Below are positions 193-60,790 of a stretch of DNA of 64,000 nucleotides, one piece after another. The DNA is from Octopus sinensis (taxonomy: Eukaryota). Each line of letters begins with the position of its first letter. Position 1 is the first letter of the stretch. The stretch lies in NCBI RefSeq assembly GCF_006345805.1, contig NC_043014.1, forward strand, positions 45,818,001 through 45,882,000, given 5' to 3'. The notes beneath the pieces were generated by a model. It made no database searches. It had not been told where the DNA came from and saw nothing but the letters and a program-made list of their open reading frames with translations. The position numbers and the translations under genes are program-made.

Positions 193-444
193 ATGTATGT
201 ATATTTTCTTTTTTTTTTTTACCTTTAAATCTTGAGTGATTCTCGTTATTTCAGGTGGCCACAAGACACCACTGGACAATGATTAGAATATGGACATTTG
301 GTTTCACTGATAATGATGATGATGATGCTGATGAGGACAAGGAGGAAAATGAGAATAACAGATGGTGGTATGCCAGCATGGAACATGAACATTAAATGAT
401 GATGATGATGATAATGATATAAAAACACAAGTACAGTGAGTGTA

Positions 445-594
445 GGTGGCATGTAAAAAGCACCAGCTACAATCACGGAGTGGTTGGCATTAGGAAAGGC
501 ATCCAGCTGTAGAAACACTGCCAAATCAGACTGGAGCCGTCCAACCCATGCTAGCATGGAAAACGGACGTTAAACGATGATGATGATGATGATT
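445..594 (+). mobile_element. Family C element, RTE-like 3' tail
   Basis: ggtggcatgtaaaaagcacc module, then tggttggcattaggaaaggcatccagctgtagaaac...catgctagcatggaaaacggacgttaaac and a (GAT)n tail. Confidence 0.75.
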
Positions 595-1920: not shown

Positions 1921-2323
1921 TACTCTCTTTTACTTGTTTCAGTCATTTGACTGCGGCCATGCTGGAGCACCACCTTTAATCGAGCAACTCGGCCCCGGGA
2001 CTTATTCTTTTGTAAGCCCAGTACTTATTCTATCGGTCTCTTTTGCCGAACTGCTAAGTAACTGGGACATAAACACACCAGCATTGATTGTCAAGCAATG
2101 CTAGGGGGACAAACACAGACACACAAACACACACACGCATACATATATATACATATATACGACGGGCTTCTTTCAGTTTCCGTCTACCAAATCCACTCAC
2201 AAGGCTTTGGTCGGCCCGAGGCTATAGTAGAAGACACTTGCCCAAGGTGCCACACAGTGGGACTGAACCCAGAACCATGTGGTTGGTAAACAAGCTACTT
2301 ACCACACAGCCACTCCTGCACCT
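1921..2323 (-). mobile_element. SINE family A, full length
   Basis: Head, internal (CA)/(TA) microsatellite and tail ggtgctccagcatggccgcagtcaaatgactgaaacaagtaaaaga all present. Confidence 0.9.
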
Positions 2324-2927: not shown

Positions 2928-3150
2928 GGCGGTGAGCTGGTAGAATTGTTAGCATGTTGGATGAAATGATTAGCGGTATTTTGCCTGTTGCTACGTTCGG
3001 AGTTCAAATTCCACCACGGTCAACTTTGCTTTTTATCCTTTCAGGGCCAATGAAATAAGTACCAGTGAAACACTGGGGTTGATGTGATCAACTAGTCCCC
3101 TCCCCCAAATTTCAGGCCTTGTACCAATAGCAGAAAGGATCATTATTATT
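2928..3150 (+). mobile_element. SINE family B2, near full length
   Basis: Head ggcggtgagctggtagaattgttagc, B-box gagttcaaattcc, B2 tail with (ATT)n. Confidence 0.75.
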
Positions 3151-3160
3151 ATTATTATAT

Positions 3161-3303
3161 TGGCGTTAGGAAGGGCATCCAGTCGTAGAAACACTGCCAG
3201 ATCAGACTGGGCCTGATGCAGCCTTCCGGCTTCGCAGTCCCCAGTTGAACCGTCCAACCCATGCTAGCATGGAAAGCGGACGCTAAATGAAGATGATGAT
3301 GAT
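3161..3303 (+). mobile_element. Family C 3' tail
   Basis: tggcgttaggaagggcatccagtcgtagaaac...gacgctaaatgaagatgat. Confidence 0.75.
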
Positions 3304-4497: not shown

Positions 4498-5359
4498 TGA
4501 GTGAGTGATGGAGTATGCATGAGAGAGAAAGAATAAGAAATGGAGTATGCATGAGAGAGAAAGAATAAGAAATATAGTGGAAAAAGAGAGAGAGAGAGAA
4601 ATAGACTGAGAAACAGAGAAAAAGAGAGGAAAATAGAGGGAGAGTGAGTAAAAGGTTGTACTGCTGGGCTCTTGTGACAAATGCCAAATCTTTATTGCTC
4701 GGCTCCTCTGTGTGTGTGTAGATGTTTGTTTAACAAAGGTCAACCAAGAAGTACACAGGAAAATAATGAAGAGAGCAAATGATGTCTGTTTGAAGGAGGA
4801 CATCAAGAATTTGACCAACTGTTTATCTTAACACTAGCCACCCCCACTTCTTTACCCATGCACTCATCCTCAATAAAAGTTGTTGTCGTTTAACCCCAGG
4901 TCAGTCAGCCCTATGACGACTTGAAGAAATATTCTTTAGACACCCCTGAAAATATGACCAGCATAATCTTTTCAAGGATATATAAATACTACTTTCTTTG
5001 TCCTTTCTTATCTAAAAACTGTTTCTGCTTCAATAAAACAAAGTTTTTCAAGAATAATCAAATCCATTTAAATATGAAATGATGCTTCATCAGATTGACA
5101 TACCTTCTTAACTATTTGACGAAAAATATAGTTAATATAAACCACTAAATTCTTCGGATATTTAATATCCCTTAGGTGTATTTTACACCTAGCTAAACTG
5201 ATATATAACATGGCCAAGATATATATATATATCATCTATAAAAAAGAAACAAACAAATTCACTACTAACAACATTGGCTAATTATATAGGGTACACAATT
5301 TCTTGGTGGGGAAGATGATCATGGGGTCTGAAGATGTAATATATATATATATATATATA

Positions 5360-5467
5360 CAAGCAATGCCTTGATATATGAGTTAATTCATTCTTGGAAA
5401 AAACTCGTAAAAGCATGTAAACCTAGGGGTTTCAGAAAGTGGGTCCTCATAAAGTGAGGGGTTACTG
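5360..5467. mobile_element. Possible tiny pogo/Tigger-like MITE
   Basis: TA-flanked; degenerate inverted termini caagcaatgccttgatatatgag and (reverse complement) cagtaacccctcactttatgag. Confidence 0.35.
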
Positions 5468-5665
5468 TATATCTAATTAAAAAAAAAAAAAAAGAATGGG
5501 GGTGGGGATGAATTGAAACATTTACAAACTATTAGTTTGTGGCTATAATGAATTCAGCCACTATTTAGAGTAATGTCATTTAAAATTTTTAAAAATTACT
5601 TTGTTTTTACCATCTTAGGTATATCATCTTATCAAATAGAAAAGAAAAAGAACAAAAGAACTCAC

Positions 5666-5755
5666 CAGATTTTCGGTTAATTCATAACAGATAAAAGTAG
5701 TGTGGAATACACACACACACACTTACCTACAAATAAAAAAGAGAGAATATGTCAG
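5666..5755 (-). other. Candidate recursive splice site with 61-nt cryptic exon
   Basis: Minus strand reads CTGAC-atattctctcttttttattt-GTAG|GTAAGT; second donor CTG|GTGAGT 61 nt downstream; stops in all three frames between them. Confidence 0.5.
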
Positions 5756-5879
5756 AAGACGTGTCTTTTATTCAATACACATGATAACTTGTTTTCAAAA
5801 ACAAACATTATTCTTATCACAAATAACAATAATACTATTACTATAAACAGTATGAATAATAATACTTTCTGTTATTGGC

Positions 5880-6012
5880 ACAAAGCCTGAAATTTTTGGG
5901 CAGGGGTCTAGTCAATTATATTGACCCCAGTGCTCAACCGGTGCTTAATTTATCAACCCAAAAAGGATGAAAGGCAAAGTTGACATCGGTGGAATTTGAA
6001 CTCAGAATGTAA
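5880..6012 (-). mobile_element. SINE family B2 fragment
   Basis: aaggatgaaaggcaaagttgac...gaatttgaactcagaatgt is the reverse complement of the B core. Confidence 0.7.
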
Positions 6013-6184
6013 AGAAGGCGCAGGAGTGGCTGTGTGGTAAGTAGCTTGGTTACCAACCACATGGCTCCGGGTTCAGTCCCATTGCGTGGCACCTTGGGCA
6101 AGTGTCTTCTACTATAGCCCCAGGCCGACCAAAGCCTTGTGAGTGAATTTGGTAGACAGAAACTGAAAGAAGCTTGTCATATAG

Positions 6185-6378
6185 CTCCTGCACGCATTTT
6201 TTTTCTCTCCTTGTTTCTCTCAGTGTTTCTTTTCTGTGTATCTTTCTGTTGAAGAGCGTAGGCTCGAAACATAAAAGACTTGTTTTACTTCTATTCCTGA
6301 GCGCCATACTAATACAATTGTTTATTTGTACTCCACCTGCCTTCGTCTTTTGTTTATTTTCATAAAGTTTCCCATTAT
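6185..6378 (+). mobile_element. Penelope-like element terminal fragment
   Basis: Pyrimidine-rich leader, hammerhead-like motif, downstream ttcctgagcg...taata motif shared with 25875-26060 and 61625-61826; ends at (TA)n. Confidence 0.6.
6241..6278 (+). ncRNA. Minimal type-I hammerhead-like motif, variant core CUGUUGA
   Basis: Stem I tcttt/aaaga; core ctgttga+a; stem II gagc-gtag-gctc; gaa; stem III acat (one change from palindromic acgt); then a. Confidence 0.55.
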
Positions 6379-7811
6379 ATATATATATATATGTAAGTGT
6401 GTGTATATGTTTGTGTGTCTGTGTTTGTCCCCCTAACATCGCTTGACAACCAATGCTGGTGTGTTTATGTCACTGTAACTTAGCGGTTCGGCAAAAGAGA
6501 CCGATATAATAAGTACTGGGCTTACAAAGAATAAGTCTTGGGGTCGATTTGCTCGACTAAAGGTGGTGCTCCAGCATGGCCGCAATCAAATGACTGAAAC
6601 AAGCAATAGAGTATGGATGCAATGCCACTAAGCATGTTGTCTGCCATGCTAACAATGCAAATAACAACGAATGACGACATATTCATTCTTAATAGATTCT
6701 GGCAGATTCAAATATGAATATGTTAATTGCTGTTGTATTTTGTCATTGTAGAACAACTCCATTCAGACAATGTGTGTTCACGATACACTCGATTCATTAG
6801 CATAAAGGAGACTTTAGAACACCTAATGTTTCAACATCATTGTATCCCCTCAGCTAAAGTTGCTCTGGACAAATAAATCTAAGTCTGTATCTCTTCATCA
6901 TAAATTCAACAAACAAATTGTTTGCTGGTGCATGCTGATATCTACCAGTTGATAATAATATCTACTATAGGTATACGAACCAAAGAAGTCCATCATATGC
7001 ATATTAAATTATGTATGCGTGCATGTATGCATGTGTGTGTGTCTTGTTTGTCACCCATCACTACTTGACAACTAGTGTTGGTTTGTTTTCATCCCCATCA
7101 CTTACTGATTCAACAAAAATGAATGATAGAATAAGGTACAAGGCCATTTGGGTAGGGTGTAATTTGAGGAAGATTTACTGCTGTTTCTAGCAGATTGAGT
7201 GACTGCTGACCTAAATTAACCCTCAAGTCAACAACATAGCTTCAAAGTGAGTTGTTCAATGTGGAAGACATAGCAGCGTAATCTCCCTCGAATCACACTT
7301 TATCATCTATAAAAAACAAACAAACAAATTCACCACCACCAGCATTGGCTAATTATATAGGGTACACAATTTCTTGGTGGGGAAGATGATCATGGGGTCT
7401 GGGGTCTGAAGATGTAATGCCTTTGATCTTCACCAGGAGCTAACAACACCAACAACAACGGCAATGATAATAATAACCCACACAAAGTCCAAGAGGACAT
7501 TTTAATTTATTTTTAAATCAACAAGTTATTGGCTGCGACTGGATAATTACAGGTACTGAGGAGTCAGTGAAGTGAATGAATTCAAGCGTGAAATGAACCG
7601 ATGTGACATAACAAACTTAAATAACAGGCAAGAGAACAAACAGTTTAACCCTAATAAGACCAACCAGCCTGAGACCGCTTCTGGATCTATGATACAACCT
7701 TCCCTCTTTTAAAAGTTTATCAAAATTACAACCTTCCATCAAAATTCCAAGTTAATTTATGCTCCAAACACCAGCTTAATATAGAGTTATTTTAATAATA
7801 ATAATAATAAT

Positions 7812-8013: not shown

Positions 8014-8077
8014 GTGTGTGTGTGTATGTGTGTGTGTGTTTGCATCCCCATCACTTATATATATATACATATATACA

Positions 8078-8230
8078 ACGGGCTTCTTTTGAGTTTCCGT
8101 CTACCAAATCCACTCACAAGGCTTTGGTCGGTCCGAGGCTATAGTAGAAGACACTTGCCCAAGATGCCACGTAGTGGGACTGAACCCGGAGCCATGTGAT
8201 TCATAAGCAAGCTACTTACCACACAGCCAC
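8078..8230 (-). mobile_element. SINE family A, 5' part, inverted relative to 7812-7975
   Basis: Reverse-complement head about 100 bp downstream of the plus copy. Confidence 0.85.
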
Positions 8231-9199
8231 ACTTTATAATAATAATAATGATCCTTTCTACTACAGACACAACACCTGCAGTTTTAGTAAGACACCACAA
8301 GTACCATCTTCACTACAACCACCACTAGGGCCAGAGTTAACCATCCTTACTACCAACTAAACAACAACCTCTCAACAAGTATAGCCATGGGCCCCACCAT
8401 CAGTATAATTACCACTGCCACCACAAACTGCTAGAGTCACCACCACAGTTCCCTTCACCACCACTGCTGCCACTGCCATCACCAGACTACGGGTATTGTG
8501 TTTGAGACCTGACCCTTGAAGGCCCTCTCCTTTTACATTTATTGCTCTTCCCTCCTCACCCCTAGCTCTCTCTTTCTCAGTCATATTTTAAGGGTGTTGA
8601 GTTCAATTATACCCTTTTCACTCCAGTACAGATTTTATTTTATGGTCTACAGAGATGTGAACAGACTTGAGAGGAGGTGGAGGAGGAGGTTGAAAACCAG
8701 AGGGAGGAGGAGGTGGCGTGAAATATTTTAACACAATCTATGTAAAGAGGGGGGATTGCTTAACAGAGGTGGAGAGTACTGTTGAACTGAAGTGATTTAC
8801 AAGGGATATATTTCATTGCCAAAGCTTCCAGTTCAAACTCTGTGTCAGTAGAGAGAGAGAGAGAGAAAGCAATGGTGGGATGCGAGGTGGGGGATAAAGA
8901 GAAAGAAGAGAGATGAAATATGCTCCAGTATTTTCTGATTTTTTTGGCTTACTCCTTTGGTAAGAAAAATTCTCAGTTGGAGATGGAAGGAAAAATAATG
9001 ACAGTAGCTGTGAAGATGATGATGGCTACGGTTGCAATTAATGATGATGATGATGGTGGTGGTGGTTCTGATAGCTGCTACACCCCCACCACATCACCAC
9101 AATACTAAATGTCCCTACTGTCAAGATTCTGCTTTTTTTTGTTGTTTTTTTTCCTAGTCAGGTAGGAAAAAAAAAACAAGAAAAAAATAGAATCTTGAC

Positions 9200-13288: not shown

Positions 13289-13673
13289 TACTCTCTTTAC
13301 TCTTTTTTACTTGTTTCAGTCATTTGACTGCGGCCATGCTGGAGCACCGCCTTTCGGGACTTATTCTTTTGTAAGCCCAGTACTTATTCTATCGGTCTCT
13401 TTTGCCGAACCGCTAAGTAACGGGGACATAAAGACACCAGCATCGGTTGTCAAGCGATGTTGGGGAGACAAACACAAACACACACACACACACATATATA
13501 TACATATATACAACGGGCTTCTTTCAGTTTCCGTCTACCAAATCCACTCACAAGGCTTTGGTCAGCCCGAGGCTATAGCAGAAGACACTTGCCCAACATG
13601 CCACGCAGTGGGACTGAACCCGGAACCATGTGGTTGGTAAACAAGCTACTTACCACACAGCCACTCCGCGCCT
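13289..13673 (-). mobile_element. SINE family A, full length
   Basis: Head, microsatellite, tail; flanked by family C fragments. Confidence 0.9.
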
Positions 13674-14000: not shown

Positions 14001-14330
14001 GGATTCAAAGAGTTGGGATTCAAAGAGTCAGGATTCAAAAAGTCGGGAATCAAGAGTCAAGATTCAAAGAGTCAAAATCGAAGAGTCAAAATTCGAAGAG
14101 TCAAAATTCAAGGAGTCAAAATTCAAAGAGTCAAAATTTCAAGGAGTCAAAATTCAAGGAGTCAAAATTCAAGGAGTCAAAATTCAAGGAGTCAAGATCC
14201 AAAGAGTCAAGATCCAAAGAGTCAAGATCCAAAGAGTCAAGATCCAAAGAGTCAAGATCCAAAGAGTCAAAACTCAAAGAGTCAAAATTCAAAGAGTCAA
14301 AATTCAAGGAGTCAAAATTCAAAGAGTCAA
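14001..14330. repeat. 15-bp minisatellite, about 22 units
   Basis: Units gagtcaaaattcaaa, gagtcaaaattcaag and gagtcaagatccaaa; flanked by taaatggt at 13991-13998 and 14342-14349. Confidence 0.95.
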
Positions 14331-16560: not shown

Positions 16561-16932
16561 TTTTACTTGTTTCAGTCATTTTGACTGCGGCCATGCTGGA
16601 GCACCGCCTTTAATCGAGCAACTCGACCCCGGGACTTATTCTTTTTTGTAAGCCCAGTACTTATTCTATCGGTCTCCTTTGCCGAACCGCTAAGCTACGG
16701 AGACGTCAACACACCAGTATCGGTTGTCAAGCAATGCTAGGGGGACAAACACACACATATATATATATACATATATACGACAGGCTTCTTTCAGTTTCCG
16801 TCTACCAAATCCACTCACAAGGCTTTGGTCGGCCCGGGGCTATAGCAGAAGACACTTGCCCAAGATGCCACGCAGTGGGACTGAACCCGGAACCATGTGG
16901 TTGGTGAGCAAGCTACTTACCACACAGCCACT
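16561..16932 (-). mobile_element. SINE family A, full length
   Basis: Head, microsatellite, tail. Confidence 0.9.
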
Positions 16933-17139
16933 GCCATCGTTTTTTATTTTATTTTATTTTTTAAATTCATTTTGGAAGCGAGAAGAGGAAGAAACTTGGA
17001 TTGCACTAACTAATGTGCCCTTCCCTTGTTCAGACAGAGGGCGTGGAGATTTGAGAAAGATTTGGCTGTTATTTCTAGTAACCAAGTCGAAACTCATTCA
17101 TTTGAGGTATTTATGGGTTAAACGTGCGTTTATATGCAT

Positions 17140-18065: not shown

Positions 18066-18458
18066 TACTCTTTTACTTGTTTCAGTCATTTGACTGTGGC
18101 CATGCTGGAGTACCACTTTTAGTTGAGCAAATCAACCCCAGGACTTATTCTTTGTAAGCCTAGTACTTAGTCTATCAGACTCTTTTGCTAAACCGCTAAG
18201 TTACGGGGACGTAAACACACCAGCATCGGTTGTCAAGCGATATTGGGGGGACAAGACACACAAACACACACACACACACATATATATATATACATATATA
18301 CGACGGGCTTCTTCCAGTTTCCGCCTACCAAATCCACTCACAAGGCTTTGGTCGGCCTGAGGCTATAGTAGAAGACACTTGCCCAAGGTGCCACGCAGTG
18401 GGACTGAACCTGGAACCATGTGGTTGGTAAGCAAGCTACTTACCACACAGTCACGCCT
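18066..18458 (-). mobile_element. SINE family A, full length
   Basis: Head, microsatellite, tail. Confidence 0.9.
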
Positions 18459-19549
18459 ACGAAAACTTTTGCATTTTATTTGAATCGAAAGCCATCTCCT
18501 AGATACAGATACAATCTGACTTGTGTAGATTAACACGAAAAATTATATCTAACGAAGTAACTATTTTGTGACGTTTTCGATATTTTTTGTCAACTCTTAT
18601 GGTTCATTAAAGAAAGGAATGTTAACAGAATCGTTCGAGCGTTGAACAAAATGCTTAGCGGCATTGTTCTGGCTCTTTAACGTTCTGAATTTCATCCTTT
18701 CGGGGTCGATAAGATAAAGTACCAACCAAGTACTGGGGTCGATGTAATCGTTTTACCCGCAGCTGGTCCTGTGCCAAAGAATTATTTCGTGTCTATAAAT
18801 CTTCACTCTCTCTCTCTCTCTCTCTCTGATTTAGTACAACTTTTCTGGGGGGATTTTCCCCCCAAAACCATAAACATTTCAAACGAGGAATTTAATATTG
18901 GGCAAGCCAGCAGGTATACTGGACTGCACCACGTACACATGTGAAAATCAGCTGAAATGTCAAAAAAGCATTTCCTTATTGGTTCTGGGTAGGATCCAGC
19001 CTCACCAGAAACTCCGAAATAAAAAAAAAAAATAGGCGCTGGAGCACAGACACGGTGGAATTTGCTTATCTGACAGCAAGCTTGTCAGCAGTTTATTAAA
19101 GTTTGGCGGTTAGTTATGTGAAAACTTCATTTCAAGACCAGCTTTTATTAATAAAGTGAATATGGACAGGAGTTTTGGCGATATGCTAATTTGACAGGTT
19201 AACATTTTTAACAACAGCAGTTATGTTAAAGATTTCATTCCAAACAACATAGTTCGCCAATATAGACATTGTTAACAATGAGATGGTTTGTGGCACTAAT
19301 TTTTGATGGTGATAATAAGCAGTAATGGTGGCGGAAACTGTTAGAAGTCATGATGGTGGTGGAAAAAATGGTGGGAGTCAAAATGGTGATGGTGAGAGTA
19401 GCTGCCTGGACGGTGGTGATTGTGGTAGTAGTGGTAGTCAAAACGGTGGTGGATGTGGTGGTAACAGATGACAATGGTTGAAACACCTCCCCCCCCCCCC
19501 CGCAATTATACATCCCGTAGTTGTTACAGTGGTGGTGGGGTAATGACTA

Positions 19550-37748: not shown

Positions 37749-37946
37749 TACATTACATACATACATACATACATATATATATATACGACAGGCTTCTTTC
37801 AGTTTCCGTCTACCAAATCCACTCACAAGGCATTGGTCGGCCCGGAGCTATAGCAGAAGACACATGCCCAAGATGCCACGCAGTGGGACTGAACCCGGAA
37901 CCATGTGGTTGGTTAGCAAACTACTTACCACACAGCCACTCCTGCA
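37511..37946 (-). mobile_element. SINE family A, full length
   Basis: Head, microsatellite, tail. Confidence 0.9.
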
Positions 37947-38414
37947 CCAGGATATGGCCGGTTTAAATGCTAAAAGCGTTAAAGACATATTTGGAATGGA
38001 ATTTTAAAGCGGCAGCATAGTCAAAACTCATTTTTAATTTTTTAATTTCATACGCATTTTTTGCGAATACATCATCATTGGTTACAGGTTTCTGGCAGAC
38101 ACCATAATTCGCTGTTTCATAGGATGCTGTGAGCATAAATAGACAATGCCAGAGGAAAGAACTACATAGCTTTGGCTGAAACACCTCTACCATAAGTTTA
38201 CTCAGTTGGAGCTTCAGCTAGGGCTGAACAGCAACAGATGGCAAACTACAGTAGTTGCAGTGGTTTTTATAATAATAATAATAATAATAATAGCAATAAT
38301 AATAATAATGTCGAATTAAAAATGTCATTTGCTCTGTGTTAAATAAATGCCTTAACTTCACAAGTGTCCTTAAAGCAATATTTCAAAATTGCATTAGTTA
38401 TACTTCCATGTTTT

Positions 38415-43428: not shown

Positions 43429-43493
43429 GCGCAATCTGTTAGCGCGTTCGGCTGTTAATTGAAAGGTTGGTGGTTCATGCCCACCTGGGGACG
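43429..43493 (+). pseudogene. tRNA-Asn(GTT)-derived sequence, 5'-truncated
   Basis: gcgcaatctgttagcgcgttcggctgttaattgaaaggttggtggttcatgcccacctggggacg differs at 7 of 65 positions from the metazoan tRNA-Asn as I recall it; GTT at 43454-43456; the 5' acceptor strand is missing and the B-box is mutated. Confidence 0.8.
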
Positions 43494-43576: not shown

Positions 43577-43904
43577 GGCATTTTTTTTTTATATTCTCTG
43601 AAACAAAATATATTTTTAACACATCCCAAACCATAAATTCTGTATACTGGTCCAGGCATGCTCATTATCTTCTCCAGTTTCTTTGCGGGGGGGGGGTACT
43701 TTTTATAGCATTTTAGAAGAGGAGAGGCCTAACAGCCTCTTCGCTCAGGGCAATCAACTCTCCTCTTCTTCTTGGAGAAAAGGAACAGGGCATGACATCT
43801 CTTGTGGCTCTCTCACAGAATAGCTGGTTGAGAGGGAGAGAGAGAGAGAGAGAGAGAGAGACGAAGGGGTTAGACAGGAAAGGGAAGAGAGATGAAGGGG
43901 AGAG

Positions 43905-44470
43905 TGCTGAAGAGAGGAAGAGAGAGAACTGAAGAGAGGGATAGAGAGCTGAAGAGAGAGAGGGAGAGAGCTGAAGAGAGGGAGATAGAGAGCTGAAGAG
44001 AGGGAGATAGAGAGCTGAAGAGAGGGAGATAGAGAGCTGAAGAGAGGGAGATAGAGAGCTGAAGAGAGGGAGATAGAGAGCTGAAGAGAGGGAGATAGAG
44101 AGCTGCTGAGAGGGGAGATAGAGAGCTGTGAGAGAGGGAGATGAGAGCTGAAGAGAGGGAGATAGAGAGCTGAAGAGAGGGAGATAGAGAGCTGAAGAGA
44201 GGGAGATAGAGAGCTGAAGAGAGTGGGGAGAGAGAGAGCTGAAGAGAGTGGGGAGAGAGAGAGCTGAAGAGAGTGGGGAGAGAGAGAGCTGAAGAGAGTG
44301 GGGAGAGAGAGAGCTGAAGAGAGTGGGGAGAGAGAGAGCTGAAGAGAGGGAGAGAGAGAGCTGAAGAGAGGGAGAGAGAGAGAACTGAAGAGAGGGAGAG
44401 AGAGAGAGCTGAAGAGAGGGGAGCGCGAGCTGAAGAGAGGGGGAGCGCGAGCTGAAGAGAGGGAGAGAAA
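43905..44470. repeat. About 20-bp GA-derived minisatellite
   Basis: Unit gagctgaagagagggagata and variants. Confidence 0.95.
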
Positions 44471-44815
44471 GAGATGAAGAGAGGGAGAGAGAGAGATGAA
44501 GAAAGGGATATAGAGAGATGAAGAGATGAAGAGAGGGAGATAGAGAAATGAAGAGAGGAGTAAGAAGATAGAAGATGGATGAAGAAGAAGAGGGGGAAAG
44601 AATTGGTAACAGTATTTGGAAGGCACTTTATCAATCCTGGAAGGATGAAAGGCAGATATGAACCTTGGTGAGATTTGAACCCAGAATGTAAAGAGCTGGA
44701 ACAAACTACTGCAAGGCATTTTGTCCGATGATCTAACAATTCTACCAACTGATGACCTTTCTGTACCGAAATACAACTTTAACAAACGAGAAAGAAGAGA
44801 GTAAAACATTGTGTG

Positions 44816-44846
<31 letters not shown>

Positions 44847-44893
44847 TGTGTGTGTTTGAGTGTGTGTGTGATTGAGTGAGTGTGTGTGTGTGT

Positions 44894-44930
<37 letters not shown>

Positions 44931-44984
44931 TGTGTGTGTGTGTGTGTATGTTGTGGTGATGTGTGTGTGTATGTGGAGTGTGCG

Positions 44985-45392
44985 TGTGTGTGATTGAGTG
45001 TGCGTGTGTGTGATTGAGTGTGCGTGTGTGTGTGTGATTGAGTGTGCGTGTGTGGTGTGATTGAGTGTGCGTGTGGTGTGTGTGAGGTGCGTGGTGTGTG
45101 TGTGTGATTGAGTGTGCGTGTGTGTGATTGAGTGTGCGTGTTGTGATGAGTGTGCTGTGTGTGTGATTGAGTGTGCGTGTGTGTGATTGAGTGTGCGTGT
45201 GTGTGATTGAGTGTGCGTGTGTGTGATTGAGTGTGCGTGTGTGTGATTGAGTGTGCGTGTGTGTGATTGAGTGTGTGTGTGTGTGATTGAGAGTGTGCGT
45301 TGTGTGTGATTGAGTGTGAGTGCGGTTGTGATTGAGTGTGTGTGTGATTGAGTGTGTGTGTGATTGAGTGTGCGTGTGTGTGATTGAGTGCA
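44985..45392. repeat. About 20-bp GT-derived minisatellite
   Basis: Unit gtgtgattgagtgtgcgtgt and variants. Confidence 0.95.
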
Positions 45393-46487: not shown

Positions 46488-46835
46488 TTTATTAGTTTGT
46501 CATTTGACTGTGGCCATGCTGGAGCACTGCATTTAGTCGAACAAATCGACCCAAGAACTTATTCTTTATACCACCTAGTATTTATTCTATCGGTCTCCTT
46601 TGCCAAACTTATGGGGATGTAAACATACCAACATCGGTTGTCAAGCAATGGTGGGGGGAGGGCACAAACACAGACATACACACATGGGCTCCTTTCAGTT
46701 TCCGTCTACCAAATCCACTCACAAGGCCTTGGTGAGCCTGAGGCTGTAGTAGAAGACACTTGCCCAAGGTGCCATGCAGTGGGACTGAACCCGGAAACAT
46801 GTGGCTGGTAAGCAAGCTACTTACCACACAGCCAC
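46488..46835 (-). mobile_element. SINE family A, near full length
   Basis: Head, short microsatellite, tail. Confidence 0.85.
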
Positions 46836-47374
46836 TGTAGATGTTATTGTAGATTGGTATTTACTTTATCAAGCCAGATGGATGAACAGCAAATGATACA
46901 TGCATATATAAAACACATGTATATATGTAATACATTAGAAGAAAATAAACTTTACAGTAGAATTTACTTATTCAGCTGATTCTAATAACCATTGAGATTC
47001 TTTCTTGTATTTATTTGAGCAGTTGTGAGAACCAACGCATAGAAGTGTCACAGTGAATCATCAATGTGTGTGTGTGTTATAGACAAGATAAAGTTCTGGA
47101 GGAGCGAGAGGTGAATATATTTATTTAGCCCCTAGACATCCTGTAGGACTGCAGCCGGTTTTGAGTTGAAGCATTGACGCATCCATGATATTCAGATGAT
47201 CTGAAAAACCAACCTGCTGTATTATCTGCATTGATTTGTTAATGTACAATTGTTACTGTACAATGTCCAGCATGTATATTAGTGCGGACATGTAAAATAA
47301 TTTATTAAACACTGAAATTATTGCATGATAAAGGTTGTGAAACAGCTGTACTCCTAAGGATGTCAAGTGCTTAA

Positions 47375-47989: not shown

Positions 47990-48530
47990 TCATCATCATC
48001 ATCATCGTTTAGCGTCCGTTTTCCATGCTAGCATGGGTTGGACGGTTCTACTGGGGTCTGTGAAGCCAGAAGGCTTCATCAGGCCCAGTCAAATCTGGCA
48101 GTGTTTCTACGGCTGGATGCCCTTCCTAACGCCAACCACTCCGTGAGTGTAGTGGGTGCTTTTTACGTGCCACCCGCACTGTGCCAGACAGAGCTGGCAA
48201 ACGGCCACGAACGGATGGTGCTTTTTATGTGCCACCGGCACGAGGGCCAGGCGAGGCTGGCAACGGACACGAAACGGGGCGGTGCTGGCAATGGTCGCGA
48301 AACGGAAAAGTTCTCTTACATGCCACCGGCACTGGTAACACATCTGCAATTTCCATTGATCGATTCGATTCTGATCGTCACTTGCCTCAACGGGTCTTCA
48401 CAAGCAGAGTTTTGACATGCCACCGGCACTGGTAGCACATCCGCAATTTCCATTGATCGATTTCGATTCTGATCCTCACTTGCCTCATCACGTCTTCACA
48501 AGTAGAGTTTTGTGTCCCAAGAAGGGAAGG
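47990..48530 (-). mobile_element. Family C, long form with four modules
   Basis: RTE-like tail plus repeated gccggtggca(c/t)gt modules, including an ~85-bp tandem duplication at 48320-48505. Confidence 0.85.
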
Positions 48531-56470: not shown

Positions 56471-56514
56471 TTACACGTATATGTATACAACGTGGTAACG
56501 TAATTTGTACATAT

Positions 56515-56961
56515 GTGTGTAAACGTATTTGAATTTACAAACAAGAGGGAAAAAATGTACTCAAACACAGAGTTTCCTTTCTCTTGAAAAAATCGGCTGC
56601 CTTCAAACCGGGAGAGAACTGGGCTCCGCCATGTTTGAAATTTTCGACGACACGACCTATGTCAAGGCGATGCCTCTGCGATGCCTTCGAGAGTGAAGAG
56701 ACCAAGGAAAGGACCCGAAACACACACACAGACGAATGAATACGTACGTATTCTCCTTTCCTTGGTTTCTTCACTCTCGAAGGCGTCGCAGAGGCAATCA
56801 CCTTGACATAGGTCGTGTCGTGGACATTTCAAACATGGCGGAGCCCAGTTCTCTCCCGGTTTGAAGGCAGCCGATTTTTTCAAGAGAAAGGAAACTCGTG
56901 TGTTTGAGTATTTAAAAAAATTTTTTTTAATCTCTTGTTTGTAAATTCAAATACGTACACA
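56515..56961. mobile_element. Fold-back element with about 190-bp arms
   Basis: 56523-56713 is a near reverse complement of 56754-56956; the spacer holds the perfect palindrome gaatacgtacgtattc (56738-56753). Confidence 0.85.
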
Positions 56962-57002
56962 CAGACGTGTCATCGATCGCTCTGCAAAGTCAAGTAAAAA
57001 AA

Positions 57003-57876: not shown

Positions 57877-58680
57877 TCTTAGCATAAATAGATCAGTTTG
57901 AAATGACAGAAACACTGATGCAACGATAAAAAAAAGAATTTCAGACATCCAATAAACGCCAAGAAAAGAGATGAGAGAGGAGAGAGAGAGAGAGAGAGAG
58001 AAAGTCGATGGTCTTTCGCAAACTTTTGGGAGCCATTTTGGTTAAATTTAAATAAAAATTCAGTGGATTATAATAGAGTTTATCTATGTTGACATCTAGA
58101 CAAAACTACAAGTCAAAACAAAACACCACACACACACACACATATGAACAACAGTTTTATTCTATTTCTATTTTAAATCATTTGGGTGTGTTAAAAGTAC
58201 CATTGTACATTTTATTTTTATTTCGAAAATGAAACCTAAAAATTCAGCTTAATTTATATGTACATTTTATTTATTGACTTGACAAGAGTGATTGCTAGCT
58301 GACTAATTTAATAGGAAGCCGGATATTCTTTTGAAAAGTATTTCTTTTCCTAAAAAAAGAAACTGTAATGCGACCAACTCACGCTTCAGCAACTAATTAG
58401 AAAATGGAGAATTTTAATATTTCTAATGAATTTATCTTTTAACATTCTTTTGGTGCTTGAAGCGTGTAAAAGTTCTCGAGAATTCTTTTTTTTAGGACGT
58501 TTGTGATTTTAGTTCTTACTTATTCGCCTGTCCCACCCCCACTTTGCGCTCAGGCGCAGTCAATTCAATGCAACGACTCGCTTCCATATCAAGTCCTGGT
58601 GCGCGGCACCTTGGGCAAGTGTCTTCTACAATATCCCCGCTATGGTAGACGAAAACTGAAAGAAGTCCGTCGTGTTACCG

Positions 58681-59450
58681 GTCTGTTCTGAAGGTCTTTC
58701 GCGGCCGGAGCCTATGAATAACTTCCAGAAATCCCTCACCTGGCAGCGTTACCGAGGGGCGCTGCCTGTTCGGGATAAACTTTACAGGTACGGAAGTGCT
58801 GACAGCCGGGCCTGCCCGTTGCGCGCGTAGAGCGACGAAACCGTTCTGCACACCCTCGTGCAGTGCCTGAGCATTGCTGGCACGTGGTTTTATGTCGAAC
58901 ACTTGCTGTCACATGTGGGACCGATCCGGCTATCAGCTGAATCCATACTGAAGATTGCCCCGTCGCCCTCATTTGGCCGGGAAGGGCAGGCAACATTTAT
59001 TTGTCTGGTGGCTGTAGCGAAAGAAGTAGTCTGGTGGACTCATTTGACACTTTCCTCTTAGGCCAAGACCTCATCAACTTCTTCAAGTTTCACTTGAAGA
59101 GGAAAGTGAGGGTGGAGAGGGAAGTGTTGCCTCCAGAGCAAGTTTAGTGAAAGGTGGGTGAATGTTGGTTGGAAGAACGGTCAGCGTGAAAGGACCAATT
59201 CTGAATATACACCTGTGAGAAATAAAAGAAGGGCTCTTGCCCTGTTGGGCAGGTACCTATGGCTTTTCTGGGTTTTTCCACGAGTAACCTTTAAAGAGCC
59301 TCCCCCTATTTCGGAGTTTTATATTTTCTGTTATTTACTGTGTACACGAATGTGAAAACCCGTCGTATCGTCCGTTTATTTTTGTCTTTAAATGTTATAG
59401 CATGTCCTTTTATGTTTGTATATATTAGCCCTTGTGGCCAATAAAATATT
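58681..59450 (+). pseudogene. Tx1/L1-clade LINE 3' end: ORF2 C-terminal zinc-binding (zf-RVT-like) region and 3' UTR
   Basis: Translates FQKSLTWQRYRGALPVRDKLYRYGSADSRACPLRA*SDETVLHTLVQCLSIAGTW...LVAVAKEVVWW, matching the W..GALP...CP.C...ET..H...C...W pattern of L1/Tx1 ORF2; in-frame TAG at 58828-58830 and later frameshifts. Confidence 0.8.
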
Positions 59451-60329: not shown

Positions 60330-60790
60330 GCATCCGTGCTAGTGGAGCGCTAAGAGCACCATCCGAGCGTGATCGTTGCCAGAGCGGCTAACTAATTGGC
60401 TTCCGTGCTGGTGGCACGTAAAAAGCACCATTCGAGCGTGATCGTTACCAGCGTCGCCTTGGTGGCACGAGAAAAAATAAAACATTCGAGTGAGGTCGTT
60501 GCCAGTGCCGCTGGACTGGATCCTGTGCAGGTGGCACGTAAAACACACCATTTGAGCGTGGCCGTTGCCAGTACCGCCTGACTGGCCCTCGTACCGGTGG
60601 CACGTAAAAGCACCCACTACAGTCTCGGAGTGGTTGGCGTTGGGAAGGGCATCCAGCTGTAGAAACTCTGCCAGATCAAGATTGGAACCTGGTGCAGCCA
60701 TCTGGTTCGCCAGTCCTCGGTCAAATCGTCCAACCCATGCTAGCATGGAAAGCAGACGTTTAAACGTTGGTGATGATGATGATGATGATA
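60330..60790 (+). mobile_element. Family C, long form with four modules
   Basis: Repeated cgagcgtgatcgttgccag...ggtggcacgtaaaa units, then the RTE-like tail and (GAT)n. Confidence 0.85.

What the first reader, a model, noticed from the sequence alone, without database searches (positions are those of the whole stretch)
5666..5755. Candidate recursive splice site (ratchet point) with a poison exon, minus strand
Seen: branch-point-like CTGAC (5755-5751), a 17-nt pyrimidine tract, TAG acceptor fused directly to a perfect GTAAGT donor (junction 5727/5726), a second strong donor CTG|GTGAGT 61 nt on, and stop codons in all three frames of that 61-nt exon. Established: this layout is how very long introns are removed stepwise in Drosophila and vertebrates, where the cryptic exon typically carries premature stops. 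Inference: the window is part of a giant minus-strand intron that is recursively spliced; I am not aware of this being described in cephalopods. It lies in non-repeat sequence. AGGTAAGT alone can occur by chance in 64 kb; the combination of signals is the evidence.
Basis: partly seen in the sequence, partly recalled or inferred. Interest (0 to 1): 0.78.

Follow-up and report, generated by a model that had tools for sequence, protein, structure and literature searches.

The report
Recursive-splice-site look-alike in octopus DNA
A stretch of octopus non-coding DNA carries a textbook-quality "splice in, then splice straight out again" signal of the kind that lets flies and vertebrates remove giant introns in steps, but nothing available here shows that it is transcribed, conserved or used, so it remains an untested candidate.

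Summary
They are CTGAC 25 nt upstream, a 17-nt pyrimidine tract, TAG|GTAAGT at 5727/5726, a second donor CTG|GTGAGT 61 nt on, and stops in all three frames.

The joint acceptor+donor score is the clear outlier of the window: 22.3 bits against 16.5 for the next best on either strand. Null sequences reach that score in 0-2% of simulated windows. The full combination is expected about once per thousand windows, which still means tens to hundreds of chance sites in an octopus-sized genome.

Repeat content shows the window is octopus DNA.

I could not find a host gene, a transcription strand, an orthologous sequence or any RNA evidence. The three defining tests of recursive splicing are location in a long sense-strand intron, conservation of AG|GT, and junction or saw-tooth reads. 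All three remain untested.

The stop codons are uninformative. The donor abuts a (GT)7 microsatellite. No second such site occurs in the 64 kb.

My estimates:
- about 50% a fortuitous, unselected look-alike
- about 35% a recursive site that is really used
- about 15% another kind of exon boundary

If real, it is a new member of a known kind, in a new phylum. Interest is modest.

The parts
5751..5755 (-). Branch-point-like CTGAC. The branch A at 5752 is 25 nt upstream of the acceptor, with no AG between them.
   Evidence: sequence. CTRAY occurs in the -45..-12 zone of 8% of positions by chance.
5731..5747 (-). Polypyrimidine tract TTCTCTCTTTTTTATTT (16 of 17 Y, with a U6 run).
   Evidence: In one search, 16 of the 19 positions upstream of the AG are Y. 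Only 3.9% of 19-nt windows reach that.
5727..5729 (-). Acceptor TAG. The junction lies after G5727.
   Evidence: The 3'ss part of the score is 13.4 bits.
5721..5726 (-). Consensus donor GTAAGT fused directly to the acceptor (the candidate ratchet point).
   Evidence: the only AGGTAAGT in the window. The 5'ss part of the score is 8.8 bits.
5709..5722 (-). (GT)7 microsatellite. Its first unit supplies positions +5 and +6 of the donor, and it lies inside the putative cryptic exon.
   Evidence: exon sequence GTAAGTGTGTGTGTGTGTATT....
5666..5726 (-). Putative 61-nt cryptic (RS) exon. Its length is not a multiple of three, and it has stops in all three frames.
   Evidence: Stops in all frames are found in 21-24% of random 61-mers.
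5660..5665 (-). Downstream donor CTG|GTGAGT that would define the cryptic exon. It matches the consensus less well than the regenerated donor.
   Evidence: GTRAGT lies 20-200 nt downstream of 10% of positions by chance.

Best explanation
The most likely reading, by a narrow margin, is a fortuitous and unselected juxtaposition of splice-site-like motifs in T-rich, microsatellite-flanked non-coding octopus DNA.

How it would arise. AGGTRAGT octamers are expected a few times per 64 kb. One position in ten (one in seven on this strand) already has a pyrimidine-rich run upstream. The donor's last two bases come from the edge of a (GT)7 array. GTRAGT hexamers are common, partly because every copy of the local SINE carries two of them. 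In a genome of about 2.7 Gb (size from general knowledge), such coincidences must occur many times.

How it would behave. On this reading the site is either not transcribed from the minus strand, or it is an unselected pseudo-site. If it does lie in a sense-strand intron, the sequence is good enough that the spliceosome would probably use it, and would then re-splice from the regenerated GTAAGT. That is why the recursive-splicing rival stays close behind.

What is shown: the sequence anatomy and its chance rates. What is inferred: everything about use.
For: Chance rates on the real sequence:
- The core plus Y tract is expected about 0.1-0.3 times per window, and the full combination about 1e-3 times.
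- Extrapolated by me to about 42,000 windows per genome, that gives thousands of core sites and tens to hundreds of complete look-alikes.
- The accessory features and their distance windows were chosen after seeing the site, which inflates the apparent rarity.

Base rates in large genomes are low:
- Mouse brain shows 19-20 recursive sites among 28,382 transcribed long introns (PMC8797253).
- In human, 36,870 conserved strong-acceptor AGGT sites in long introns gave 342 candidates and 16 saw-tooth sites (PMC6110456).

Local observations:
- No second comparable site occurs in the window on either strand. In flies most introns over 40 kb carry recursive sites (PMC6110457).
- No gene, exon or RNA family gives a transcription strand.
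- The stop codons are uninformative.
- The local SINE supplies many GTAAGT and GTGAGT hexamers.
Against: - The joint score of 22.3 bits is about 6 bits above anything else in the window on either strand. It was reached by 0-2% of simulated windows and by nothing in 40.7 kb of O. vulgaris DNA.
- Every accessory feature sits where the recursive-splicing model needs it. The branch point is at -25 with an AG-free zone. There is a U-rich tract. A cryptic exon of 61 nt compares with the fly norm of about 50 nt. The downstream donor is weaker than the regenerated one, as in 67% of human cases. The exon length shifts the reading frame.
- The site is not part of any repeat family seen in the window.
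Confidence: 0.5

Rival explanations
1. It is a genuine recursive splice site (ratchet point) in a long minus-strand intron.

Proposed steps:
1. The upstream exon is spliced to G5726, using branch A5752 and acceptor TAG5727. Exon definition is helped by the donor at 5665.
2. The junction regenerates a consensus donor, xxx|GTAAGT. This out-competes CTG|GTGAGT, so the 61-nt cryptic exon is removed together with the rest of the intron.
3. If the regenerated donor failed, the frame-shifting, stop-containing exon would be included and the mRNA would probably be degraded.
For: - The anatomy matches the published definition exactly (PMC8605326; PMC8797253). In mouse, real sites are enriched for AGGTAAGT, pyrimidine tracts and strong acceptors.
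- It is a strong statistical outlier in the window, with a joint chance rate of about 1e-3 per window.
- No coding exon can end at 5727, so it is not an ordinary coding-exon donor.
- The window contains no recognisable protein-coding ORF. This fits a very long intron, and fits intergenic DNA equally well.
- In human, 60% of strong conserved intronic AGGT sites have at least one junction read. A site this strong would therefore probably be used if it is transcribed in sense.
Against: - There is no evidence for minus-strand transcription, a host gene, conservation or RNA intermediates.
- Only one such site occurs in 64 kb.
- The base rate is low if octopus behaves like mouse or human.
- The selection of features was partly post hoc.
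Confidence: 0.35
2. It is a conventional 61-nt alternative exon: a poison or NMD exon, a UTR exon, or an exon of a long non-coding RNA. It would be bounded by the acceptor at 5727 and the donor at 5665. The GTAAGT at its 5' end would be incidental or only occasionally used.
For: - A strong acceptor, a branch point and a good donor 61 nt apart are enough for exon definition.
- In mouse, 46 of 84 junction-supported AGGT candidates turned out to be unannotated exons (PMC8797253).
Against: - Fly mutagenesis shows that the stronger of the two donors wins (PMC8605326). A consensus GTAAGT at the exon's first base should therefore cause skipping.
- There is no transcript evidence.
- There is no coding potential, with stops in all three frames.
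Confidence: 0.1
3. It has some other origin:
- the ordinary donor of a non-coding exon lying upstream (5728 and beyond), or
- a splice-site pair carried by an old transposable element whose other copies lie outside the window, or
- a feature of the plus strand, whose sequence ACTTACCT resembles the 5' end of U1 snRNA.
For: - The site lies about 100 nt from the A/T-rich tail of an interspersed repeat.
- Only 64 kb could be searched for further copies.
Against: - No similarity to the SINE or to any other repeat in the window.
- Rfam finds no U1 or any other credible family at the site, even at E up to 1.
- The frames upstream are closed.
Confidence: 0.05

Closest known systems
Drosophila intronic ratchet points with cryptic RS-exons (Ubx, kuz, Bx; Hatton 1998, Duff 2015, Joseph 2018/2021, Pai 2018)
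   Same: - A juxtaposed polypyrimidine tract, YAG|GTAAGT.
- A short cryptic exon (61 nt here, about 50 nt in flies), closed by a second donor that is weaker than the regenerated one.
- Exon content that shifts the frame and contains stops (PMC8605326).
   Different: - Fly sites are defined by location in long sense-strand introns, ultraconservation of SA|SD, and junction or saw-tooth reads. None of these is known here.
- Most fly introns over 40 kb carry recursive sites. This 64-kb window holds only one candidate.
- The organism is a mollusc, in which no recursive splicing has been reported in the held literature.
Vertebrate recursive splice sites with RS-exons (for example Cadm2, Lsamp, Hs6st3; Sibley 2015, Zhang 2018, PMC8797253)
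   Same: - An AGGTAAGT core complementary to U1, a pyrimidine-rich 20 nt upstream and a strong acceptor.
- An exon-definition donor downstream.
- A stop-containing RS exon, as in 68% of human RS exons.
- A large, repeat-rich genome with sparse sites.
   Different: - Vertebrate sites lie in introns over about 50 kb of brain-expressed genes over about 300 kb, mostly in the first or second intron, and are highly conserved. None of this could be checked here.
- The vertebrate base rate is very low, at tens of saw-tooth sites per genome.
Pseudo-exons, decoy splice sites and UG-repeat-flanked cryptic exons (TDP-43-repressed type; from general knowledge)
   Same: - A splice-competent acceptor and donor pair in deep non-coding sequence.
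- No coding capacity.
- A (UG)7 run inside the putative exon.
   Different: - Those exons do not begin with a consensus donor.
- No TDP-43 dependence or inclusion data exist here. The resemblance is recalled, not tested.

Membership tests
Recursive splice site / ratchet point (fly and vertebrate) | Juxtaposed strong 3' splice site (branch point, pyrimidine tract, YAG) and 5' splice site (GTRAGT) around AG|GT | tested here: met
   The sequence is TAG|GTAAGT, with 16 of 19 Y upstream and CTGAC at -25. The joint score is 22.3 bits, against 16.5 for the next best in the window.
Recursive splice site / ratchet point (fly and vertebrate) | Short cryptic RS-exon closed by a downstream donor that is weaker than the regenerated donor | tested here: met
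   The interval is 61 nt and ends in CTG|GTGAGT. Strength was judged only by consensus match; MaxEntScan or NNSPLICE were not available. Compare PMC8605326 and PMC6110456.
Recursive splice site / ratchet point (fly and vertebrate) | Location on the sense strand of a long intron (tens of kilobases) | not testable with these tools
   - No annotated octopus locus containing the window could be reached. Exact ORF look-ups failed.
- The concatenated-ORF homology searches failed their positive control.
- Pfam and Rfam gave no strand information.
Recursive splice site / ratchet point (fly and vertebrate) | Evolutionary conservation of the SA|SD core above its flanks | not testable with these tools
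   No cephalopod genome collection is searchable by DNA. The metagenome scan with 27 nt around the junction found nothing. The ORF overlapping the site has no relative among 1.84 billion representative proteins.
Recursive splice site / ratchet point (fly and vertebrate) | RNA evidence: reads joining the upstream exon to the site, a saw-tooth coverage step, and recursive lariats | not testable with these tools
Fly-type regime specifically | Recursive sites in most introns over 40 kb, often several per intron | tested here: inconclusive
   Only one site above 17 bits occurs on either strand of the 64 kb. Whether the window is one intron is unknown.
Poison / NMD cassette exon | Inclusion of the exon in some transcripts, with a premature stop that triggers decay | not testable with these tools
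   The stops and the 3n+1 length are present. Stops in all frames occur in 21-24% of random 61-mers. No transcript data are available.
U1 snRNA gene or pseudogene on the plus strand | Match to the U1 covariance model | tested here: not met
   Rfam at gathering threshold over the window and at E up to 1 over 5300-6100 gave no U1 hit.
Copy of the local tRNA-derived SINE (which carries TG|GTAAGT and TT|GTGAGT) | Sequence similarity to the SINE consensus | tested here: not met
   Self-BLAST of 4800-6700 finds no SINE similarity within 5370-5827. In the SINE alignment the two donors are 103 nt apart, not 61.

The most novel reading that the evidence does not exclude
The site is a selected, constitutively used zero-nucleotide recursive splice site in a giant intron of an octopus gene. 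That would be the first such case in a mollusc or lophotrochozoan. It would imply that fly-style ratchet points with cryptic RS-exons are an ancestral bilaterian way of handling very long introns, and that cephalopods, with their vertebrate-sized introns, use them.
Probability: 0.25. Interest if true: 0.5.

Novelty: new member of a known kind. Interest (0 to 1): 0.3.

Why it matters
Recursive splicing is documented in Drosophila and in vertebrates. These are two of the three great bilaterian branches, and they use it very differently: hundreds of constitutive sites in flies, against a few tens of clear sites in mouse.

Cephalopods combine an invertebrate lineage with vertebrate-sized genes and a huge nervous-system transcriptome. 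The library held here contains no study of recursive splicing in any mollusc.

A verified site would extend the mechanism to Lophotrochozoa. It would also give a concrete locus for asking which regime cephalopods follow.

A splicing specialist would not be greatly surprised, because the mechanism needs only the standard spliceosome. A single motif-only candidate also carries little weight until it is placed in a gene and checked against RNA.

Tried and rejected
1. Exact look-up of 11 window ORFs in the 15-billion-protein collection, to reach the source contig or allelic contigs. None is on record.

2. Two homology searches with concatenated window ORFs, intended to find coding exons or orthologous annotated ORFs. 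Both returned nothing. One search contained a SINE ORF that on its own hits Octopus proteins at E of 1e-34. The format therefore failed its positive control, and neither result is evidence of absence.

3. A Pfam scan of 61 unique ORFs found no family. This is a weak test for short exons.

4. Rfam over the window found only a tRNA-like SINE head at 43429-43485. ARAGORN found nothing. So no intronic snoRNA or miRNA gives a host strand.

5. A metagenome scan for the 27-mer around the junction found no match.

6. An exhaustive phmmer search with the ORF overlapping the site gave one weak hit (29% identity over a short stretch, E = 3.6e-4), which I did not inspect and take to be spurious.

7. Three O. 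vulgaris loci were fetched through SINE-derived proteins. They contain mostly short single-exon gene models, too little intron sequence to calibrate strand skews or to test for sense-strand enrichment of the motif. L002 was not exported to the script area, so only L003 and L004 were scanned.

8. Rejected readings:
- a U1 pseudogene on the plus strand
- a decayed SINE
- the donor of a coding exon ending at 5727, because the frames are closed within 13 codons

9. Strand composition: the minus strand has T>A and C>G. It is dominated by microsatellites and has no octopus calibration, so I drew no conclusion from it.

10. One literature query was badly built and uninformative. Duff 2015 is not held.

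Full report
OBSERVATION

On the minus strand the window reads ...gtcttCTGACatattctctcttttttatttgTAG|GTAAGTgtgtgtgtgtgtattccacactacttttatctgttatgaattaaccgaaaatCTG|GTGAGTtc....
- CTGAC lies at 5755-5751. The presumptive branch A at 5752 is 25 nt upstream of the acceptor, with no intervening AG.
- A 17-nt tract at 5747-5731 is 16/17 pyrimidine and contains a U6 run.
- TAG|GTAAGT has its junction at 5727/5726.
- CTG|GTGAGT has its junction at 5666/5665.
- The 61-nt interval has stops in all three frames.
- AGGTAAGT occurs exactly once on the two strands of the 64 kb.

Two details need correcting. First, the G and T at donor positions +5 and +6 are the first unit of a (GT)7 microsatellite (5722-5709) that lies inside the putative exon. 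The site also sits in locally T-rich sequence (45% T over 5600-5760), about 100 nt from the A/T-rich tail of an interspersed repeat. 'Non-repeat' is therefore true only in the sense that 5370-5827 has no other copy in the window. Second, stops in all three frames occur in 21-24% of random 61-mers of this window, so that item carries almost no weight.

IS IT MORE THAN CHANCE?

I used two approaches.

(a) Rule-based counts. I counted AGGTRAGT with at least 14 of 19 pyrimidines upstream.
- It occurs once in the window.
- It is expected 0.07-0.29 times in Markov order-1, -3 and -5 simulations of the window.
- Adding a GTRAGT 20-200 nt downstream lowers the expectation to 0.003-0.027.
- No simulation out of 900 had the full set including a CTRAY branch motif.

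(b) A juxtaposed acceptor+donor weight matrix. The frequencies are my own approximate metazoan values, so this is a heuristic and not MaxEntScan.
- The site scores 22.3 bits (13.4 for the acceptor, 8.8 for the donor).
- The next best AGGT on either strand scores 16.5, about what the null predicts for the best site (15.0-17.6, SD 2.0-2.4).
- A best score of at least 22.3 occurred in 0, 0.5 and 2% of simulated windows.
- In 40.7 kb of Octopus vulgaris DNA fetched for other reasons, the best score was 12.6.

Rates taken from the real sequence rather than from simulations:

| Feature | Rate |
|---|---|
| AGGTRAGT octamers expected per window | about 3.3 |
| Positions with at least 14/19 Y upstream | 10% (13.5% on the minus strand) |
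| Positions with at least 16/19 Y upstream | 3.9% |
| Positions with GTRAGT 20-200 nt downstream | 10% |
| Positions with CTRAY at -45..-12 | 8% |

Multiplying these gives about 0.1-0.3 per window for the core plus tract, and about 1e-3 for everything together.

The site is therefore a real outlier in this window. However, an octopus genome holds about 42,000 such windows (genome size from general knowledge). It should therefore contain thousands of chance cores and tens to hundreds of complete look-alikes. The accessory features and their distance windows were also chosen after the fact.

WHAT IS THE WINDOW?

It is 38% G+C and extraordinarily rich in microsatellites, with 109 TRF rows. It also carries more than 20 copies of a tRNA-derived SINE.

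An ORF spanning one SINE copy hits only Octopus vulgaris and O. bimaculoides proteins, at E of 1e-34 to 1e-12. The hits map to O. vulgaris chromosomes, and other repeats are shared with those loci. The cephalopod assumption is therefore supported: this is octopus DNA. The species is not established. None of eleven window ORFs is on record, although the annotation of the three O. vulgaris loci I fetched includes several such short ORFs, so the window may come from another species or from an unannotated stretch.

All ORFs of at least 120 aa are low-complexity or repeat-derived. Sixty-one ORFs in unique sequence match no Pfam family.

I tried to detect exons, and orthologous annotated ORFs within 10 kb of the site, with two concatenated-ORF homology searches. 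Both returned nothing. The second contained the SINE ORF that on its own gives strong hits, so this query format failed its built-in positive control. I draw no conclusion from either search.

Rfam and ARAGORN give no intronic RNA gene that would reveal a host strand.

So the window may be a giant intron or intergenic DNA. Its transcription strand is unknown.

WHAT THE SITE WOULD DO IF TRANSCRIBED FROM THE MINUS STRAND

This section is inference from established mechanism.

In flies, a ratchet point is a tandem acceptor|donor. It is recognised through a cryptic RS-exon of about 50 nt closed by a downstream donor. After the first splice, the regenerated donor competes with the RS-exon donor, and the stronger one wins. 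The cryptic exons are poorly conserved, usually out of frame, and harmful if included (PMC8605326).

In human, 67% of regenerated donors are stronger than the RS-exon donor, and 68% of RS exons carry a premature stop (PMC6110456).

In mouse, real sites are enriched for AGGTAAGT, for pyrimidines in the upstream 20 nt, and for strong acceptors (PMC8797253).

The present site has all of these:
- a branch point at a canonical distance
- a U-rich tract
- YAG
- a perfect GTAAGT
- a 61-nt (3n+1) interval
- a good but less perfect donor, CTG|GTGAGT

The predicted course has three steps:
1. The upstream exon is ligated to G5726.
2. The regenerated xxx|GTAAGT is used in preference to 5665.
3. The 61-nt segment leaves with the downstream part of the intron.

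No coding exon can end at 5727, because the upstream frames close within 13 codons. So this is not simply the donor of a coding exon.

WHY I DO NOT ACCEPT THE INTERPRETATION YET

Three features define a recursive site beyond its motif:
- location on the sense strand of a long intron
- conservation of the SA|SD core
- RNA intermediates

All three are untestable with what is available here.

Base rates differ by orders of magnitude between the two known regimes.
- Flies have more than 500 sites, and most introns over 40 kb carry one. In that regime a site this good would almost certainly be real.
- In mouse brain only 19-20 sites were found among 28,382 transcribed long introns. Most other junction-supported AGGT candidates were unannotated exons.
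- In human, 36,870 conserved strong-acceptor AGGT sites in long introns gave 342 candidates and 16 saw-tooth sites, although 60% had at least one junction read in 70 billion reads.

Octopus has vertebrate-like intron sizes (general knowledge), so I weight the vertebrate-like regime more heavily.

The window contains no second comparable site on either strand. This mildly disfavours a fly-like regime, or disfavours the idea that the whole window is one recursively spliced intron.

Weighing these points, I estimate:
- about 0.5 that the site is a fortuitous, unselected look-alike that is not used
- about 0.35 that it is really used as a recursive site, with about 0.25 that it is a selected one
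- about 0.1 that it bounds a conventional non-coding or poison exon
- about 0.05 for other origins

COMPARISON WITH KNOWN SYSTEMS AND NOVELTY

The layout is that of the known ratchet point or RS-exon, with nothing architecturally new. If real, it is a new member of a known kind in a phylum where the held literature has no report.

The (UG)7 run inside the putative exon recalls UG-repeat-flanked cryptic exons repressed by TDP-43. That is a recalled resemblance and was not tested.

VERDICT

Interest is modest (0.3), because the claim is an expected extension of a known mechanism and rests on motif evidence alone. Placing the window in an annotated assembly would settle its gene context, and public octopus RNA-seq would then test whether the site is used.

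Noticed in passing
window, more than 20 copies, e.g. 6016-6183 (+), 8060-8240 (-), 2140-2320 (-), 13490-13670 (-), 16760-16940 (-), 18280-18460 (-), 37770-37950 (-), 46660-46840 (-): A tRNA-derived SINE (consensus ...GGCTGTGTGGTAAGTAGCTTGC...GGTTCAGTCCCACTGCGTGGCA...CCTTGTGAGTGGATTTGG...). It carries two invariant donor-like motifs, TG|GTAAGT and TT|GTGAGT, 103 nt apart. It accounts for most GTAAGT and GTGAGT hexamers in the window. Its ORFs hit only Octopus proteins.
   Followed up: partly
window 56509-56970: A palindromic element of about 460 bp. It has perfect 72-nt inverted arms (56570-56641 / 56826-56897) nested within further inverted arms of 83-95% identity. It looks like a MITE or a hairpin-forming repeat.
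   Followed up: partly
window 58660-59260 (+): A G+C-richer stretch with frame-shifted ORFs (...ALPVRDKLYRYG...CPLRA / SDETVLHTLVQC...W...). By eye these resemble the C-terminal zinc-knuckle region of a non-LTR retrotransposon ORF2. The Pfam scan of these ORFs gave no hit, so this is unconfirmed.
   Followed up: partly
window 43830-45390: Very long compound microsatellite arrays with higher-order periods. There is a (GA)n-rich array with 22- and 44-nt periods, followed by a (TG)n-rich array with a 20-nt period. GC skew reaches 0.65 over 44-46 kb. Similar kilobase-scale arrays lie at 14.7-15.3, 15.7-16.2, 22.2-22.6, 30.7-31.3, 38.4-39.0, 41.5-41.9 and 54.5-55.1 kb.
   Followed up: no
window 14003-14330: A 15-nt minisatellite (ATTCAAAGAGTCAAA), 22 copies at 90% identity.
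   Followed up: no
window 43429-43485 (+): The only Rfam match at gathering threshold is a partial tRNA-like sequence (31.8 bits, model positions 10-63). ARAGORN does not call it, so it is presumably the head of a SINE.
   Followed up: no
window 249-569, 2616-2837, 3036-3263, 48038-48415, 60339-60746: A second interspersed repeat family, recognisable by translated motifs such as HGLDGSTG..EARRLHQAQS.LAVFLRLDALPNANHSV.VVGAFYVPP. It contains internal tandem duplications of 62-66 nt (TRF rows at 48155-48273 and 60483-60609).
   Followed up: no
tool behaviour: Concatenating many ORFs with X spacers into one long query made search for homologous proteins miss hits that the same ORF finds on its own. 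Negative results from such queries should not be trusted.
   Followed up: yes
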